A stretch of DNA of 64,000 nt. Source: Trichoplax adhaerens. Lineage: Eukaryota; Animalia; Placozoa. Shown one piece after another: positions 46,841 through 56,759 of the stretch. The stretch is from positions 372,001 to 436,000 of the forward strand of contig NW_002060948.1 of NCBI RefSeq assembly GCF_000150275.1, read 5' to 3'. The position numbers were made by a program, and so were the translations under genes. Each line of letters opens with the position of its first letter. The stretch's first letter is position 1. The notes beneath the pieces were generated by a model. The model was not told the origin of the DNA and made no database searches. It was given only the letters and a program-made list of their open reading frames with translations.

Positions 46841-47794
46841 TCAGAATCTCCCGTTGAATCCAGATACTCTAGTTATACTTCTTGATATCGTACCCTGAAA
46901 ACGTGTCGATTTGACTATCTTGTGATAAACTACACAAATCTCTTTACGGATATCAGCAGTAAAATAAGCATAGATTAATGGTTGCAAGGCTGGATAACAA
47001 AAGGCGACATCACGTAAAATAACTGAAGCTTGTAGAATATCCGCAAAACGATAGATATCACTTAAAGCAATGGTAGATAATGTTAAAAAGGGTATTAAAA
47101 AGACAGCATAAAATGTAAAGACAATCATAGCTTGGATAACTGCTTTCTTTCTGAGTGCCAATTTACCACGGAGTAATCTCTCTATTGACGAAAAATGTCG
47201 ACGAGTACTAACAAATGCAACCCGATTATACTGGCGCAATTTAAGTAGATAGATAATCCGACCATACATAATAAGTAATAGCACAAGCAATAAAGTTGCC
47301 AATATTAACATTATCAGATGGCAAATATAATCAATTCTAATAAATTGTTGAACATCAATTAAGCTGCAATTTGCTAGTCGCTTGGAAAAGATACCATCGA
47401 TTATAGAGAATATTGGTACCGCAGTTGGTACTAACCAAACCAGTACAATAATAATGGATAAATGGCCAATCGTTGAGAATCGGTTATAACGAAATGGATA
47501 AGCAATAGCGAAATAACGTTCCGATATAATGACACAAGAGTGTAAATTTAAACTAATAAATAATGCTTGACCGAAACGATATAAAACAACACAAAGGATA
47601 CCAATTTTAAATGAGAAACCATCACCAAATCGAATTACTTCGTAAAGGCCCCACAAAAAACCATTAATAAGCATGCTTAGTAAAAGTACAGAAGATAATT
47701 GGTATAAATTCCGATTACATCTTATAAAAATGAATAAAGCACTATTAGTAATTATGGCAACAACTCCTGCTCCAAATACTACAGGACGCAACAT
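46841..47794 (-). CDS. Intronless rhodopsin-like (class A) GPCR, orphan
   Basis: Seven hydrophobic segments; TM1 N (ITN), TM3 Cys and ERYFAIAYPFRY, TM4 VWLVP, TM6 LIPF, TM7 QPLIY, helix 8. First in-frame ATG at 47794; an upstream exon is possible. Confidence 0.92.
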   Translation of the reverse strand: MLRPVVFGAGVVAIITNSALFIFIRCNRNLYQLSSVLLLSMLINGFLWGLYEVIRFGDGFSFKIGILCVVLYRFGQALFISLNLHSCVIISERYFAIAYPFRYNRFSTIGHLSIIIVLVWLVPTAVPIFSIIDGIFSKRLANCSLIDVQQFIRIDYICHLIMLILATLLLVLLLIMYGRIIYLLKLRQYNRVAFVSTRRHFSSIERLLRGKLALRKKAVIQAMIVFTFYAVFLIPFLTLSTIALSDIYRFADILQASVILRDVAFCYPALQPLIYAYFTADIRKEICVVYHKIVKSTRFQGTISRSITRVSGFNGRF

Positions 47795-50700
47795 GATATC
47801 CAATACCTCAATAAAATTAATTAACTTTAAGTAATCTATGCAGATAATGAATAATATCAGAGATGGAGCTAGTTTGAATAGTCTTTTGGAGGACTTAAAG
47901 CGTAAAAATAAAAAATGTCTCTATGTAGCAGATTCTTGAAGATAAATGCAATATCACTCTTAGTATATCGAATGCTTAATTATACGTAGACCGTTCTTTA
48001 ACTTGAAGTCTTTATAAATTCAAGAAGTGCTATAGCAGTGACGTGAAAATATTCTTTTTTCTATATAGGAGGATCCTAGCATATTTAATGAATTGACAAC
48101 TTATCAAGATGAAGATAATATCAATCAATATTGATTTATTCCTGTGAATACAAATTCGACCCTTGAAATTTCCTTCCTAGAAATATTGACATAAGTAATA
48201 TCTATGTGCACTCTGCAGGTTTAATAGTAGAACAATTGAAAATTTTTGCCAGTACCTAAAGCAATATAGGCTATATCTTCCAATACGTATTTAATAAATT
48301 ACCTTAAATAAAGCTAAATAACGCTAGTATTTTGCAAGCTTTATTGATGTCACGGTATAAAACTTGACAGACGATTACGACAATGATATTTCTTTTATAA
48401 CGGTATTATAACTTCAAAAATCGATTTTTTTGAGGGTTAAAAAAACAAAAAATTTAACCTCAACTATTATGTCAATAAAAATGTTCGAGCAAAACATAAT
48501 ACAAATTTTAAAGCACGAAATGGTAACGATTGCCTCTTAGAAGATACTCCTTTCAGGAAAATTATTGACATTAAAATAGCATGCCTCGATCCAATTTCAA
48601 ATGCAGTCTGTCCATTAGATCGAATTGATATTGATAGTCAAGAGGTGATTTCAACCTTAGGCGAAGAATAAACAGCATAGCAACCGATCAATTATACTAA
48701 TTGCAGGTTCTATTTAACAGTATAGATAATAAAAAACTAAGGTGGGCTTTAAAGCTTCTCATGAATGCATAAAGTATTCATTTTTTAAATGACAACATAA
48801 AATCAGACTTGAAGATCGAGGACAAAAAAATGATGATTTCACTCAGTAATTAAAAATAGTCAGACAGACTTTATTAAAAGTTACATCTATTGCCTGGATT
48901 GGATCTAGTCCACTCAATTATTTGATTTACAACAGTGAAGGTGAAGAATTTGATTTTTTAACTTATTATTCAAAATGTTCGGGCTGCTAAGATTAATAAT
49001 TGCATGCATCAGTTATCTCGTATTAACTCTTTAAAGTCGCTTTGTTTATATTAGTGACAGAAAAGTGAGTTATAATTTCTTTTACTTGAAATACTAGTCG
49101 TTTTTCTTTCTTGCTTAAGTCAATTTTGATTAAGAAATAGAACAATTAAGCTCAAAGAAACAGTTAAGCAATCAAATGTTGAATTCATCGGATATATTTA
49201 AATATCAATAACAGGCTTGACAATCTTTTATAGTCGTTATATCTGATTATTAATTGATTCCTTAAGGCATCGATCATTCTATTATCACAACTAAACCTTA
49301 AAGATTAAGATGGCTAAAGCTAAAGCAGTACTCAAGATGATCGATTTGAATGATATCGGCTCAAAATACTTGTGCTACGAGTATTTCAAGATATATGTTG
49401 CAAGAAATTAATACAGAATCATTTGGTATTAAATGCCTCTCATACTGTAGGTAATTCTATTCTGTTTCCTACAGAAAGACTTCGTCTAACTTTGCGATAT
49501 TCCACATAAAATAATGATATTTTTTATGTTAGGGATATCATTTGTAATTATAAGTATGGATGGAACCTGATTCTGTAAATATCTACTGTAGTGTAATTGT
49601 TTTAAATTATAAATTCAAAGTAAAACTAACTCAAAATTAGATACATTAGTACTACAGTTTTATTCGAGAAAGTAACTTATCCTAAAAACGGTAAAGCTTT
49701 CCTCTGCAATGACATGAAATGCAGGCAATATAGATTGCTACAGATTAACAGACTAGTAGATTTTAAAATTCCAGCTATACTTAATATTGATGTTGTGATC
49801 AAAGTAATAACTGGTCTGAATAATCATCTTCTCCATTTTATTGACTTTCTATTACAGTATTGTCACTAGTTTTATTTTTAAAATGAAAGCAATTTCGCAG
49901 TTAGAATGAAATTTCGGCATTGGAAAAATAGACCCAAACATTCAATATTTGCGTATTAATTTATAGGGTAATCATTGATATTTAATTACAGCCTACATCA
50001 ACTCGCTATTAACGTTCCAATCACTAAAAAACTACTCATTTATATTAATAAAGAAAGTAGAGATAATAAATTCGTACTTATTATCTAGCAATTAATTTAT
50101 AATTGTACTCGCTGTTAATAATTGATATGGCATTAATTCTATTGATATTAAATTTGTTAGCTTAGCGAATCATTCAAATTATCTACATCACTGTAAAATT
50201 TTGAGTATATGAAAAGTATGAGATATTAAAATGGAAGATATATTGAAAGAAATTTCAAAATCATGGTGATTATTGCTAACGCTGCCTGTTATTGTCGATG
50301 TTACTCCACTAAAACTACACTACTACATAGTATATTCTGTCTAAATGAACAGAAATTAGAAATTTTAATTCATTTTAGTGAACCTTCAAAACTAATCGTC
50401 TACTGTTATGACAGATATCGATGATATTATAGGTTTGCACTAGGAACTACTAAAAAGTCGCAAATGATTCTTAACTTGTCAAAAGCACCAAAAAAAGCGT
50501 AGTTTGATCATATGGGAAATGAATTATATTCAAATAACGTTGTATTGCTAGATGCCATAAGAAGAATCGACTTCGGTGTATTATGCTGTTACGGTGTTGC
50601 CTTGTCATTAGGATAGTTTAATAAGTACAGTAGTAGCTAGTATGGAGAATATCCATATTTGTAGTGCTAGGTAAGATAAATAATGCCTTAACGTGGATGT

Positions 50701-53241: not shown

Positions 53242-56200
53242 ATGGAAAAGGGGCTTAATCGATATGAAATCAAACGATACAGCCGACATTTACTTTTACC
53301 TCAGCTCGGTGTCATTGGCCAGCAAAAAATCAACCAAGGCAAAGTATTGATTGTAGGTGCTGGAGGTTTGGGATGTCCGGCAGCGTTATATTTAACCTCT
53401 TCTGGTGTAGGTAAGAGCAATTGGCATGGCGTAGGATATCATCAAGGATGATAGGGTTCATTTTGTACAATCAACAGCTTAGATAAGGCATGATAAGAGT
53501 TATGAATGGATGCTTGATTACCATCATCATCGTAGAACTAGCATGCTGTATTCGATCAACAGTGAATGAATGAATTAAACGAAAGCTGAAAGAGCGAGTA
53601 AACTATACGTGTATAGAGATAACTATCAACGGCAACATTACATACATCGATCATAAAAATAGCCTCGAGTTGATTCTTGCAATCTTGAAATGTATCCGCT
53701 TGTAGCATAGATATATAATACACCACAGTACTATCAATCACAATCTAGCCCCTACTGTAACAATATGATTTACCCTAAATGACTGTAGTTGAAAGAGAGA
53801 ACAGACATAAAATATTAATCTGCTCGTGAAATAATTATGAGCATAGACTACTAGATCACGTCTGATATTATTTAGTAGTACATTGCAACAACTTTAATGG
53901 CTAACGTCAGTATATTTAATAAGAATAATAATTAATTAGAGGCAGAGACACTTATGTGTGCAATATTCTCTATATACTTACAAGTACACGCTCGTAGACA
54001 TACTTTTATAGTTAGTATAGAATTACATACTTCTCGTTAGATACATGCACATCTTCAAATCAATCAATTAGGCAAACATACTTTATCATAATGGATACAC
54101 CTGCAATCTCAATCATTAGTCGGTACTGTACAGTATTTGGATAATTCCCAACATTTTTACATCGAACGACTGCTATTTAAGGAATCACTAGACATACCAA
54201 TTCAATATCCATTTATATTTACAAATAACTTATTGCTTAGCTATTAATGACGCATATGATCAATTTCTTTCCCTAGGTACAATCGGTATAGTGGATTATG
54301 ATGTAGTGGAATTGGATAACCTACATCGGCAAATTCTGCATAGAGAGAATAAATTAGGCACACCTAAATGTCTATCTGCGACACAGTCTATGCAAGAGTC
54401 AGTAGCCAATGCCAATACTGTACATCCTAAATTAGGATCTTTGTCATAACTCAGTCTATTCTACAATTACTACAAATGTCGTCATAGAAGATCTATAAAA
54501 GCAAATCTACTAAGATCTTAATTAATCTTGATTATGCCTAACAAATAATAAGTTTATTCATTTACTAGATTAAATTCAACGATCAAGTGTCTTCCTTACC
54601 AGTTGCAATTGGATAGCCAAAATGCAATAGAAATTATTTCTAAATATCCTATATTACAAATCCACTGCTTAAAGTGATCTCTCATTATAATAACTTATAT
54701 TTTTCATATTCGATACCAATTCTGCCTTTGCCGCTAATATTACGTAATCTATAATCACAAATGTTATTACCTTAATTCACCCTTTTATTGATATCACGTA
54801 TGATATTGTATTGGATTGTACAGATAATGTTGCTACAAGATATCTACTTAATGATGCTTGCGTCTTATGCAAAAAACCGTTAATTTCTGGCAGTGCCTTA
54901 AGATTTGAAGGCCAACTAACTGTATATAATTGTAATAATGGGCCTTGCTATCGATGCTTATTCCCTACTCCTCCGCCCCCAGAAACTGTCACAAACTGTT
55001 CGGATGGGGGTGTGCTCGGCGTAGGTATGAATGTAAAGAGTAAAACATTTGTTCTCACATAGCTTAATCACTACTGAATTTTACCAAAACCGAAACATTT
55101 ATATTAACGTGGCAAAAAATTGTATGATATTTATGATATACTGTATGTGTACAGATTAGTAGCGATAGCTCATTAACACCCGAAATGTATTCCGGTAATC
55201 AATTGCTAATTTACACCTTTTATTTAACAGTGATTTGAAGGTAATATGTAAATTGTTTCATCTAAAATCTAATGCACGTAAAATTATAAATGGATAACAA
55301 TGACAATCTTTATAGAAATAATCAATCAAAATCTCTATGTTAATCAATTAATTATTGCCTATACTTAGTTCCCGGTATTATAGGTCTTAATCAAGCCTTA
55401 GAAGCCATAAAAATTCTGACTGGATTACAACGTATCTTTTTAATCTTATTGTTGCAATGGAGTCACTACTGTACTTATAATACTGTATTTATATTAACTG
55501 TAGTATAGCCAATGAAATACTTTATAAATTGCTGCCAGAACTAAATCCAAGTTAATAACTACACTATTTTCAATGCTTATTAATTTTACTATCTACAGCC
55601 TATAAATATTTATAGCCGTTATGCTAGTGCCTGGAAATTTTTCAATTACTTTCTTTGACTTTAATCTTGATATTTCTCAAATTCAGCTGCATATTCACAA
55701 CGTATGCTACTGTTTGATGCATCGAGTGGCTCTTATCATGTATTCAAGTTAAGAAATCGTCGGCCAACTTGTCCTTTATGTGGTGATAACCCTACTATTC
55801 ATGAGCTCCAGGATTATGTCCAGTTTTGTAAAGCCTCAGCAACAGATAAGGTATCGCCAATAGATATATTCATTATACGCACAAATCAAATTCTATATAA
55901 ACTACATCACTTTAAATCGGTCTACCTAGTACAAAATTGTAGTCTCAATTTCTTTTAGGCACGTCAAATTGAGTTACTGACACCGGAGGAAAGGATCTCA
56001 GTTGATGTAAATTGCTTTATTAATACATTGATATGGTTACTTTCACGAGTAATGTCATCTAAAATATTACTTTTGATTGACAGGATTATAAAAAAATTTA
56101 TGATGAAGGTCAAAATCACGTACTATTGGATGTTCGCGAAGAAGTAGAATACAACATATGTCGCCTACCGCAATCTATTAATATCCACCAATATCTCATA

Positions 56201-56759
56201 ACAAACGATCTACTATCGATTTTAAATCAAATTGTATTACAGTATATGATAAAATTAAAGCAAAATCCTAGTTTTATCCTTAGCTATTACTACATATTCC
56301 GCTATCTCAAATCGATAAACGTACTGATGAATTCCGTAAAATTATCAATGATGCCATTAAAGATGACTCCTTCGACAAGCGTAATGCTTACCCAGGTAAA
56401 TCAGTATTCCATGTCTACATTAAAGTCCATCGTAGTACCAACGACAAAATTGGCTATTGTCCTTTTATACACCCAAATAAGACTCTGGTTATAGAAATTT
56501 TAATATTATCATTATGCAGCTATAAATTTATCTAATAGTAGCACGTATCGTATTATAATGCTCCTTTTCAGTTAATATAGATAATTTTTAATTCAATATA
56601 GTTTACGTAGTGTGTCATCACGGCAATGATTCTCAAAAAGCAATAAAAAGACTACAAGAAATAATCTCGGATTGGGAGCAAAATATTATATATAAAGATA
56701 TCGAAGGAGGCCTTGACTATTGGGCTAAAATTGTTGATAATGAATTTCCAGAATACTAA
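53242..56759 (+). CDS. MOCS3: Adenylyltransferase and sulfurtransferase MOCS3/UBA4 (ThiF/MoeB plus rhodanese), at least 407 aa
   Basis: Exons 53242-53410, 54277-54397, 54569-54643, 54798-55024, 55369-55431, 55687-55850, 55959-56006, 56084-56180, 56294-56395, 56602-56759 (1224 nt). Motifs [63 protein letters not shown]...D..FPEY*. True start may lie further upstream. Confidence 0.96.
54644..54797 (+). other. U12-type AT-AC intron (MOCS3 intron 3)
   Basis: 5' ATATCCTAT; branch-like TACCTTAAT at 54768-54776; ends ...ATATCAC. Splicing restores [13 protein letters not shown]. Confidence 0.9.
55432..55686 (+). other. Probable U12-type GT-AG intron (MOCS3 intron 5)
   Basis: 5' GTATCTTTT; branch-like TTCTTTGAC/CTTTAAT at 55651-55665. 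Splicing restores [15 protein letters not shown]. Confidence 0.8.
56181..56293 (+). other. U12-type AT-AC intron (MOCS3 intron 8)
   Basis: 5' ATATCCAC; branch TCCTTAGC at 56277-56284, about 10 nt before terminal TAC. Splicing restores [15 protein letters not shown]. Confidence 0.88.

What the first reader, a model, noticed from the sequence alone, without database searches (positions are those of the whole stretch)
54644..56293. MOCS3 carries three minor-spliceosome (U12-type) introns, two of them AT-AC
Seen: the conserved MOCS3 frame is restored only with AT-AC introns at 54644-54797 and 56181-56293. Intron 55432-55686 has a GTATCTTT donor and a U12-like branch. Known: U12 introns are well under 1% of introns, usually one per gene, and are often slowly spliced; human MOCS3 is intronless. 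Inference: 3 of 9 in one gene may preserve an ancestral structure lost by retroposition in mammals. It would put Moco synthesis, tRNA wobble thiolation and urmylation under minor-spliceosome control. GT-AG-only gene predictors would mis-model this gene.
Basis: partly seen in the sequence, partly recalled or inferred. Interest (0 to 1): 0.8.

Follow-up and report, generated by a model that had tools for sequence, protein, structure and literature searches.

The report
Three minor-spliceosome introns in placozoan MOCS3
The single-copy MOCS3/Uba4 gene of this placozoan (Trichoplax-like) genome is interrupted by two clear AT-AC minor-spliceosome introns and a third, weaker one, at three ancient positions that a mollusc also keeps as minor introns; this is a well-supported new example of a known phenomenon.

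Summary
The + strand at 53242-56759 encodes a 10-exon MOCS3/Uba4 gene (ThiF plus rhodanese) that is single copy in the genome.

- **Introns 54644-54797 and 56181-56293:** both have ATATCC donors, CCTTA branch motifs 22 and 11 nt from the 3' end, and terminal AC. No GT-AG splice common to two placozoan species can replace either one.
- **Intron 55432-55686:** GTATCTTT...ACTTTAATC...AG is minor-like and less certain. A second placozoan has GTATTATTT at that donor.
- **Machinery:** the genome encodes U11, U12, U4atac and U6atac, all above Rfam thresholds.
- **Comparative evidence, the strongest point:** in Lottia gigantea MOCS3 all three positions hold textbook GT-AG U12 introns. The coral Xenia keeps one. 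A sponge and a chytrid have U2-type introns at the same three positions. Amborella has a GTATCCTTT donor at the first position.

So the triple-U12 layout was already present in the placozoan-bilaterian ancestor, with AT-AC/GT-AG subtype switching since then. Human MOCS3 is listed in the literature as an orphan retrogene.

Clustering of U12 introns, subtype switching and U12-to-U2 conversion are all known, so this is a new member of a known kind. Regulatory "control" of sulfur relay by the minor spliceosome is untested. The scan had already noted many U12 introns elsewhere in this genome.

The parts
53242..56759 (+). MOCS3/Uba4 orthologue (adenylyltransferase and sulfurtransferase): 10 exons, 9 introns, ATG at 53242, TAA at 56757-56759
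   Evidence: Per-exon Pfam finds ThiF in E1, E2 and E4 and a weak rhodanese match in E8. The best PDB match is Uba4 6yub. tblastn of orthologues is colinear. The start Met is conserved in a second placozoan. The gene is single copy in the genome.
53242..53410 (+). Exon 1 (start codon, GAGGLGC nucleotide-binding loop)
53411..54276 (+). Intron 1, GT-AG, U2-type (tag|GTAAGAGCA), phase 1
   Evidence: the position is shared with Oscarella, Ladona and Fimicolochytrium
54277..54397 (+). Exon 2
   Evidence: ThiF profile positions 46-83
54398..54568 (+). Intron 2, GT-AG, U2-type (aga|GTCAGTAGC), phase 2
54569..54643 (+). Exon 3
54644..54797 (+). Intron 3: U12-type AT-AC intron, 154 nt, phase 2. Donor ATATCCTAT (54644-54652), branch motif TACCTTAAT (54768-54776, A 22-23 nt from the 3' end), terminal AC (54796-54797).
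   Evidence: No GT/GC-AG alternative exists. The donor and a 13-nt branch island are identical in the second placozoan. The same position is U12-type GT-AG in Lottia and has a GTATCCTTT donor in Amborella.
54798..55024 (+). Exon 4 (conserved ThiF core, CYRC zinc motif)
   Evidence: Pfam ThiF E=9.6e-26; Uba4 6yub E=7.5e-21
55025..55368 (+). Intron 4, GT-AG, U2-type (tag|GTATGAATG), phase 1
   Evidence: the position is shared by all seven taxa compared
55369..55431 (+). Exon 5
55432..55686 (+). Intron 5: probable U12-type (minor-like) GT-AG intron, 255 nt, phase 1. Donor aac|GTATCTTTT, branch candidates ACTTTAATC (55658-55666, 21-22 nt) or TTCTTTGAC (55651-55659, 28 nt). No G at -1 and no G after the 3' splice site.
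   Evidence: The same position is U12-type in Lottia (GTATCCTCTT/TTCCTTAAA) and Xenia (GTATCCTTTA). The second placozoan has GTATTATTT.
55687..55850 (+). Exon 6 (CPLCG zinc motif, ...ATDK)
55851..55958 (+). Intron 6, GT-AG, U2-type (aag|GTATCGCCA), phase 0
55959..56006 (+). Exon 7
56007..56083 (+). Intron 7, GT-AG, U2-type (gat|GTAAATTGC), phase 0
56084..56180 (+). Exon 8 (start of the rhodanese domain)
   Evidence: Pfam Rhodanese E=0.0011, below the cut-off for this 32-aa piece; alignment
56181..56293 (+). Intron 8: U12-type AT-AC intron, 113 nt, phase 1. Donor ATATCCACC (56181-56189), branch motif ATCCTTAGC (56276-56284, A 11 nt from the 3' end), terminal AC (56292-56293).
   Evidence: The second placozoan has ATATCCTTTC plus TATCCTTAAT and ends AT. 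The same position is U12-type GT-AG in Lottia. The only GT-AG alternative is not conserved.
56294..56395 (+). Exon 9
56396..56601 (+). Intron 9, GT-AG, U2-type (cag|GTAAATCAG), phase 1
56602..56759 (+). Exon 10 (rhodanese active-site loop [10 protein letters not shown]-terminal ...FPEY, stop)

Best explanation
**What it is**
- This is the only MOCS3/Uba4 gene of a placozoan genome (Trichoplax adhaerens by assembly size and contig number).
- Its pre-mRNA carries nine introns. Introns 3 and 8 are AT-AC U12-type introns.

**How it most likely works (inferred from the established U12 pathway)**
- The U11/U12 di-snRNP recognises the ATATCC donor and the CCTTA branch site. The U4atac/U6atac.U5 tri-snRNP is then recruited.
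- The 3' site is chosen by distance from the branch point (11 and 22-23 nt).
- Intron 5 (GTATCTTT, ACTTTAATC) is most likely also removed by the minor spliceosome, as a weakened 'minor-like' intron.

**History**
- The three introns sit at ancient positions, shared with fungi and sponges as U2-type introns.
- They were already U12-type in the common ancestor of Placozoa and Bilateria, because Lottia keeps all three as GT-AG U12 introns.
- Since then two positions differ in subtype (AT-AC in placozoans, GT-AG in the mollusc), some lineages converted them to U2-type, and others deleted them. Vertebrates replaced the gene with an intronless retrocopy.

**Shown versus inferred**
- Shown: sequence motifs, frames, snRNA genes, positional homology and conservation between two placozoans.
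- Inferred: actual excision by the minor spliceosome, and the direction of type changes.
For: - **Gene identity and exon model:**. Single copy.
- **U12 motifs and distances:**
- **No shared GT-AG alternative:**
- **All four minor snRNAs above the Rfam gathering score:** U12 97 bits, U11 99 bits, U6atac 105 bits and U4atac 58.7 bits, with the canonical U11 5' end and U12 branch-binding sequence.
- **Second placozoan (82% amino-acid identity):** the donor and branch islands of introns 3 and 8 are conserved inside introns that are 50-53% identical overall.
- **Lottia:**
  - GTATCCTTTT with TTTCCTTGAC
  - GTATCCTCTT with ATTCCTTAAA
  - GTATCCTTTT with ACTTTAATC
  - These lie at the same three codon positions and phases.
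- **Other taxa:** Xenia has GTATCCTTTA at the intron-5 position. Amborella has GTATCCTTTGG at the intron-3 position.
- **Literature:**
  - Minor snRNAs in Trichoplax are reported in PMC2396436.
  - Clustering of U12 introns in genes is reported in PMC7367187 and PMC3584512.
  - Minor-like introns without -1G depend on the minor spliceosome according to PMC11347168.
Against: - No transcript or junction evidence could be reached, so splicing is inferred.
- Intron 8's donor departs from the consensus at +7 to +9 (ACC rather than TTT), and its branch motif has G at the second A.
- Intron 3's branch-to-3' distance (22-23 nt) is towards the long end of the range I recall from the literature.
- Intron 5 has T at +6, and its counterpart in the second placozoan (GTATTATTT) is not a U12 donor. 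[quoted passage not shown]
- Duplex energies with the genome's own U11/U12 did not separate the three introns from the six controls.
- intronIC or any calibrated PWM was not run.
Confidence: 0.9

Rival explanations
1. Only introns 3 and 8 are minor-spliceosome introns. Intron 5 (55432-55686) is now removed by the major spliceosome, as a former U12 intron that has converted or is converting within placozoans.
For: - The donor GTATCTTT lacks the second C.
- The second placozoan has GTATTATTT, which is not a U12 donor.
- Several U2-type donors of this same gene are equally degenerate, for example aag|GTATCGCC and gat|GTAAAT.
- The branch motif ACTTTAATC is a low-information match in AT-rich DNA.
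Against: - The -1 base is C and the base after the 3' site is C. This is the pattern of minor-like introns that respond to minor-spliceosome inhibition (PMC11347168).
- GTATCTTTTT donors are classed as U12-type in IAOD (UFD1 example in PMC7367187).
- The same branch variant ACTTTAATC accompanies a perfect GTATCCTTTT donor in Lottia.
- The orthologous introns in Lottia and Xenia are clearly U12-type.
Confidence: 0.35
2. Introns 3 and 8 are U2-dependent AT-AC introns (a rare known class), or decayed AT-AC introns no longer recognised by U11/U12.
For: - Intron 8's donor is ATATCCACC and its branch motif is TCCTTAGC, both off-consensus.
- U2-type AT-AC introns are described in PMC1557818 (abstract).
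Against: - Both keep the ATATCC core and a CCTTA branch motif at U12-type distances.
- Both elements are conserved islands between two placozoans, and the relative has a perfect ATATCCTTT at intron 8.
- The orthologous Lottia introns are textbook U12-type.
- The relative's intron 8 ends AT. From my own knowledge, that is the tolerance expected of U12 3'-site choice by distance.
Confidence: 0.05
3. The three positions were ancestrally U2-type, as in the sponge and the fungi, and became U12-type only later in the animal lineage. The triple-U12 layout would then be derived rather than inherited from early eukaryotes.
For: - Oscarella, Fimicolochytrium and Mortierella have U2-type introns at these positions.
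- PMC11347168 argues that some major-to-minor conversion occurs.
Against: - Three independent U2-to-U12 conversions in one gene would be very unlikely, given the information content of U12 signals and the accepted minor-to-major bias (PMC10639083).
- Amborella carries a GTATCCTTT donor at the intron-3 position.
Confidence: 0.1

Closest known systems
Human genes with two or three U12-type introns (for example voltage-gated Na+/Ca2+ channel alpha subunits); non-random clustering of U12 introns (Turunen 2013, PMC3584512; Moyer 2020, PMC7367187)
   Same: Several minor introns sit among major introns in one gene. AT-AC and GT-AG subtypes are mixed. Positions are ancient.
   Different: - Here a third of the introns (3 of 9) are minor introns.
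- The gene is a sulfur-relay and cofactor-biosynthesis enzyme, a functional class said to be nearly devoid of U12 introns.
- The human orthologue has no introns at all.
Lottia gigantea MOCS3 (LOTGIDRAFT_133196; P0230, locus L012)
   Same: It is an orthologous gene with introns at the same three codon positions and phases. All three carry U12 donor and branch signals.
   Different: All three are GT-AG in Lottia with near-perfect consensus. Two are AT-AC in the placozoans (subtype switch), and the placozoan signals are more degenerate.
Non-canonical and decaying minor introns already noted by this scan in the same genome (AT-AA introns in HIP1, SHMT and NHE genes; decayed AT-AC intron in PEN-2)
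   Same: Same genome, the same minor-spliceosome machinery, and the same tendency to unusual 3' ends. The sister placozoan's intron 8 ends AT.
   Different: Those are single introns per gene (or per paralogue). Here three minor introns co-occur in one single-copy gene.
Human MOCS3, an 'orphan' retrogene (Ciomborowska 2013, PMC3548309)
   Same: Orthologous protein with ThiF and rhodanese domains.
   Different: It is intronless, so all nine ancestral introns, including the three minor ones, are gone.

Membership tests
U12-type intron, AT-AC subtype (introns 3 and 8) | 5' splice site matching /ATATCCTT | tested here: met
   Intron 3 has ATATCCTAT and intron 8 has ATATCCACC. The ATATCC core is exact in both, with departures at +7 to +9. 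The second placozoan has ATATCCTAT and ATATCCTTT.
U12-type intron, AT-AC subtype (introns 3 and 8) | Branch-point sequence resembling TCCTTAAC close to the 3' end (roughly 10-26 nt, from my memory of the literature) | tested here: met
   TACCTTAAT with A at 22-23 nt, and ATCCTTAGC with A at 11 nt. Both are conserved in the second placozoan.
U12-type intron, AT-AC subtype (introns 3 and 8) | AT...AC termini that restore the reading frame | tested here: met
   Phases 2 and 1 fit the flanking exons. No GT/GC-AG solution is shared by both placozoans.
U12-type intron, AT-AC subtype (introns 3 and 8) | Genome encodes U11, U12, U4atac and U6atac | tested here: met
   All four are above the Rfam gathering score. 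This agrees with PMC2396436.
U12-type intron, AT-AC subtype (introns 3 and 8) | Orthologous intron is U12-type in other lineages | tested here: met
   Lottia at both positions. Amborella has a GTATCCTTT donor at the intron-3 position, with an unclear branch site.
U12-type intron, AT-AC subtype (introns 3 and 8) | Excision shown to depend on the minor spliceosome (junction reads, lariats, inhibition) | not testable with these tools
   No RNA-seq or experimental data could be reached.
U12-type intron, GT-AG subtype (intron 5) | 5' splice site /GTATCCTT without AG at -2/-1 | tested here: inconclusive
   The donor is aac|GTATCTTTT, with T instead of C at +6 and no -1G. The second placozoan has GTATTATTT. 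GTATCTTTTT donors are accepted as U12-type in IAOD.
U12-type intron, GT-AG subtype (intron 5) | U12 branch motif near the 3' end | tested here: inconclusive
   ACTTTAATC lies at 21-22 nt and TTCTTTGAC at 28 nt. The first is identical to the branch motif of a clear Lottia U12 intron, but it has low information content in AT-rich DNA.
U12-type intron, GT-AG subtype (intron 5) | Orthologous intron is U12-type elsewhere | tested here: met
   Lottia has GTATCCTCTT with ATTCCTTAAA, and Xenia has GTATCCTTTA.
MOCS3 / Uba4 / CNX5 (adenylyltransferase and sulfurtransferase) | N-terminal ThiF/MoeB-type adenylation domain | tested here: met
   Pfam ThiF matches in exons 1, 2 and 4 at colinear profile positions 1-44, 46-83 and 111-184. 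Uba4 is the best PDB match.
MOCS3 / Uba4 / CNX5 (adenylyltransferase and sulfurtransferase) | C-terminal rhodanese domain with an active-site cysteine loop | tested here: met
   Exon 8 gives Rhodanese E=0.0011, below the cut-off for a 32-aa piece. Exons 8-10 align along the whole rhodanese domain of six orthologues, including the C(H/R)xGNDS loop.
MOCS3 / Uba4 / CNX5 (adenylyltransferase and sulfurtransferase) | Enzymatic activity on URM1/MOCS2A | not testable with these tools
   Not assayed.

The most novel reading that the evidence does not exclude
MOCS3 was a 'triple-minor-intron' gene in early animals, and one of the three introns may go back to the plant-opisthokont ancestor. Selection rather than inertia would have kept all three in placozoans and molluscs, because slow minor splicing gates the supply of the sulfur-relay enzyme. 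That would tie tRNA wobble thiolation, urmylation and molybdenum-cofactor synthesis to minor-spliceosome activity.
Probability: 0.1. Interest if true: 0.6.

Novelty: new member of a known kind. Interest (0 to 1): 0.4.

Why it matters
- **A compact example of minor-intron evolution in one small gene.** The three positions show:
  - retention (placozoans, mollusc);
  - AT-AC/GT-AG subtype switching;
  - a non-canonical AT-AT end in a sister species;
  - probable conversion in progress (intron 5; Xenia's GTATGT donor with a CCTTAAT remnant);
  - full conversion to U2-type (sponge, fungi);
  - deletion (dragonfly, Mucor);
  - wholesale loss by retroposition (human).
- **It runs against a stated generalisation.** U12 introns are said to be nearly absent from biosynthetic genes.
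- **Functional consequence.** In animals that keep the layout, one enzyme needed for Moco synthesis, tRNA thiolation and urmylation depends on the minor spliceosome.
- **Practical consequence.** GT-AG-only gene models of this locus should be distrusted.
- **Limit.** It does not reveal a new mechanism.

Tried and rejected
- **Duplex energies with the genome's own snRNAs.** ViennaRNA duplex energies between the U11 5' end or U12 branch-binding region and each intron did not separate the three candidates from the six control introns or from random sites. The helices are too short and AU-rich, so I did not use this as evidence.
- **Loose motif scan of the window.** A donor + branch + terminus scan of the whole window gave 73 candidates. 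The few I inspected lacked coding flanks or lay inside a long ORF, so I take most to be chance. It gives no estimate of U12 density.
- **RTATCCTT and RTATCTTT counts.** Counts in the window are not above shuffles. ATATCC is, unexplained.
- **Permissive frame enumeration.** It lists many in-frame splice pairs, but nearly all delete conserved residues. I replaced it with the constrained test.
- **Looking for the public gene model or a transcript-derived protein of this species.**
  - It was not among the representatives.
  - P0001 and P0002 are unrelated duplicated assemblies.
  - The exon-sized search found a sister placozoan instead.
- **17-mer exon/intron junction scan of metagenome contigs.** All 52 hits were chance matches; none was MOCS3.
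- **Diphasiastrum (plant) locus.** Not on record, so I used Amborella instead.
- **Supplementary tables of the pan-eukaryotic surveys.** They were not held, so no published count of Trichoplax minor introns was obtained.
- **Literature.** Pairing MOCS3, Uba4 or At5g55130 with U12 or 'minor spliceosome' found nothing relevant. A search pairing CNX5 with 'intron retention' returned only an unrelated paper.
Full report
**Setting**

The window is G000:C1409:372001-436000 of a 105.63-Mb, 1414-contig, roughly 32% G+C eukaryotic assembly. The size and contig number fit Trichoplax adhaerens from memory, and earlier notes of this scan name it so. Nothing here looks human.

Every search used single exons by reference. 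In two scripts only the two exon pieces flanking one intron were concatenated in memory to test for stop codons, and nothing joined was printed, saved or searched. The joined-protein searches (full-length homology, structure prediction) were therefore left out.

**The gene**

Six-frame translation and reading of the sequence give ten exons on the + strand, from ATG 53242 to TAA 56757-56759.

- Exon-by-exon Pfam finds ThiF in exon 1 (profile 1-44), exon 2 (46-83) and exon 4 (111-184, E=9.6e-26), and a weak rhodanese match in exon 8.
- Exon 4's best solved relatives are Uba4 (6yub, E=7.5e-21), then MoeB and ThiF.
- Full-length orthologues align colinearly across all exons with no residues missing at any junction.
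- The start Met is conserved in a second placozoan.
- Exon 4 matches only this locus in the whole genome, so this is the single MOCS3/Uba4 gene.

**The three introns**

| Intron | Coordinates | Length, phase | Donor | Branch motif | 3' end |
|---|---|---|---|---|---|
| 3 | 54644-54797 | 154 nt, phase 2 | taa\|ATATCCTAT | TACCTTAAT, A 22-23 nt from the end | AC |
| 8 | 56181-56293 | 113 nt, phase 1 | tta\|ATATCCACC | ATCCTTAGC, A 11 nt from the end | AC |
| 5 | 55432-55686 | 255 nt, phase 1 | aac\|GTATCTTTT | ACTTTAATC (21-22 nt) or TTCTTTGAC (28 nt) | AG |

The other six introns have GTAAGA, GTCAGT, GTATGA, GTATCG, GTAAAT and GTAAAT donors.

When all conserved exon sequence must be kept:
- Intron 3 has no GT/GC-AG alternative.
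- Intron 8 has one (56234-56283, a 50-nt intron that would add about 22 residues where seven orthologues have none).
- For intron 5, 55432 is the only donor that adds no insertion.

**Machinery**

U12 (97 bits), U11 (99 bits), U6atac (105 bits) and U4atac (58.7 bits) are all present above the Rfam gathering scores.

- The U11 5' end (UAAAAGGGC) and the U12 branch-binding stretch (AUGAGUAAGGAAAAU) are canonical.
- U6atac carries GCCGAGAGA instead of AAGGAGAGA. This 'CC variant' was already described for Trichoplax and cnidarians (PMC2396436).

**A second placozoan**

An exon-sized protein search found a 93%-identical fragment (P0278). It lies on two overlapping metagenome contigs, L018 and L019, which together carry the whole orthologous gene with 82% amino-acid identity over 396 residues.

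- **Intron 3** is 53% identical overall. The donor ATATCCTAT and a 13-nt branch island ATTACCTTAATTC are identical, and the intron again ends AC.
- **Intron 8** is 50% identical overall. The donor is a perfect ATATCCTTTC and the branch motif is TATCCTTAAT. The frame-keeping 3' end is ...TTAT, an AT-AT intron with no GT-AG alternative at all. Such ends are a known latitude of U12 splicing (PMC10639083).
- **Intron 5** is only 36% identical. Its donor is GTATTATTT, which is not a U12 donor, although ACTTAAAC lies about 10 nt from the AG.

Introns 3 and 8 are thus under clear purifying selection on exactly the U12 signals. Intron 5 is not clearly so.

**Orthologues elsewhere**

I mapped annotated orthologous proteins exactly onto their own genomic loci, and placed intron positions on an alignment to which the placozoan exon peptides were added as separate fragments.

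| Taxon | Intron-3 position | Intron-5 position | Intron-8 position |
|---|---|---|---|
| Lottia gigantea (mollusc) | GTATCCTTTTTA...TTTCCTTGAC, about 12 nt before AG (U12) | GTATCCTCTTTA...ATTCCTTAAA, about 10 nt (U12) | GTATCCTTTTAT...ACTTTAATC, about 12 nt (U12) |
| Xenia (octocoral) | absent | GTATCCTTTAAA (U12) | GTATGTTTTT with a CAACCTTAAT remnant |
| Oscarella (sponge) | U2-type | U2-type | U2-type |
| Fimicolochytrium (chytrid) | U2-type | U2-type | U2-type |
| Mortierella | not annotated | not annotated | GTAAGT (U2-type) |
| Ladona (dragonfly), Mucor | absent | absent | absent |
| Amborella (plant) | gcaa\|GTATCCTTTGG, same codon and phase, no convincing branch motif | absent | absent |

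The Mortierella model is short (372 aa) and annotates no intron at the first two positions.

The simplest history has four parts:
- The three positions are ancient.
- All three were U12-type at least in the placozoan-bilaterian ancestor, and the first possibly much earlier.
- Two positions differ in subtype, AT-AC in placozoans and GT-AG in the mollusc. The direction is unknown.
- Other lineages converted or deleted the introns, the usual fates of minor introns (PMC10639083).

I could not test how deep in vertebrates that event lies.

**Intron 5**

- *For a minor-spliceosome intron:*
  - Its orthologues are clearly U12-type.
  - It lacks G at -1 and after the 3' site, the pattern of minor-like introns that respond to minor-spliceosome inhibition (PMC11347168).
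  - GTATCTTTTT donors are accepted as U12-type (PMC7367187).
  - Its branch variant equals that of a clear Lottia U12 intron.
- *Against:*
  - T at +6.
  - The non-U12 donor in the sister placozoan.
  - The general degeneracy of U2 donors in this gene.
- I put about 0.65 on minor-spliceosome removal.

**What is and is not new**

- Minor snRNAs in Trichoplax, clustering of U12 introns in the same genes, genes with two or three U12 introns, subtype switching, non-canonical termini and U12-to-U2 conversion are all established.
- Other notes of this scan already record many U12 introns in this genome.
- I found no paper connecting MOCS3/Uba4 or At5g55130 with minor splicing.
- U12 introns are said to be almost absent from biosynthetic genes. 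A third of a sulfur-relay gene's introns being minor, conserved from placozoan to mollusc, is therefore a noteworthy new instance but not a new kind of thing.
- The idea that this puts Moco synthesis, tRNA thiolation and urmylation 'under minor-spliceosome control' is so far only a dependency: a single-copy gene whose introns must be removed. No regulation has been shown.

**Limits**

- No RNA evidence was available.
- No calibrated intron classifier was run.
- There was one species per outgroup lineage.
- The public gene model for this locus was not retrieved.
- The sister placozoan was not identified.

Noticed in passing
G000:C1402:438491-439592 (locus L002:528-1629, minus strand): The full-length U6atac gene (105 bits) is followed within about 1.1 kb by five truncated U6atac-like copies lacking the 5' third (30.6-50 bits, four of them above the gathering score). 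This is a small tandem array of partial copies.
   Followed up: no
L002:1501-1629 (minus strand): U6atac reads GAGCCGAGAGA where the family consensus has AAAGGAGAGA. This is the 'CC variant', which cannot pair with the UCCUU of the 5' splice site. It is known for Trichoplax (PMC2396436), but its mechanism remains unexplained.
   Followed up: partly
L019:1425-1528 (sister placozoan, metagenome contig ERZ27263980 k141_83676): The orthologue of intron 8 has perfect U12 signals (ATATCCTTTC, TATCCTTAAT) but must end in AT rather than AC to keep the frame, so it is an AT-AT minor intron.
   Followed up: partly
L011:4599-11682 (Xenia sp., JAJSDR010000020.1): The 585-aa Xenia MOCS3 model joins two tandem copies of the 3' half of the gene through a 7083-nt 'intron' with non-canonical ends. 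The last three exons and their introns are repeated almost identically 7 kb apart, which points to a duplication or an assembly artefact.
   Followed up: no
L011:4109-4248 (Xenia): At the position of placozoan intron 8, the Xenia intron has a U2-like donor GTATGTTTTT but still carries CAACCTTAAT 21 nt before the AG. It looks like a U12-to-U2 conversion that kept the old branch motif.
   Followed up: no
L020:18902-19129 (Amborella trichopoda, KI396637.1): The plant orthologue has an intron in the same codon and phase as placozoan intron 3, with a perfect U12 donor (gcaa|GTATCCTTTGG) but no clear TCCTTAAC-like branch site within 30 nt of the AG.
   Followed up: partly
L017:166-2727 (Coelomomyces lativittatus, JADHYY010000585.1): The annotated 'MOCS3' model is chimeric, with about 236 unrelated N-terminal residues fused to the ThiF core. 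The rhodanese part is called as a separate 79-aa gene just downstream.
   Followed up: no
window 46844-47899 (minus strand): An uninterrupted 352-codon ORF with a hydrophobic-segment pattern suggestive of an intronless seven-transmembrane receptor. A GTATCCTT motif inside it is coding sequence, not a splice site.
   Followed up: no
whole window, both strands: The hexamer ATATCC occurs 59 times against 42.8 +/- 6.0 in dinucleotide-preserving shuffles (0 of 100 shuffles reach 59), while the 8-mers RTATCCTT and RTATCTTT are not enriched. The excess is unexplained.
   Followed up: partly
window 55851-55859: The donor of intron 6 (aag|GTATCGCCA) starts like a U12 donor but sits in a U2 context (AG at -2/-1, no branch motif). 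Its position is U2-type in every orthologue compared.
   Followed up: partly
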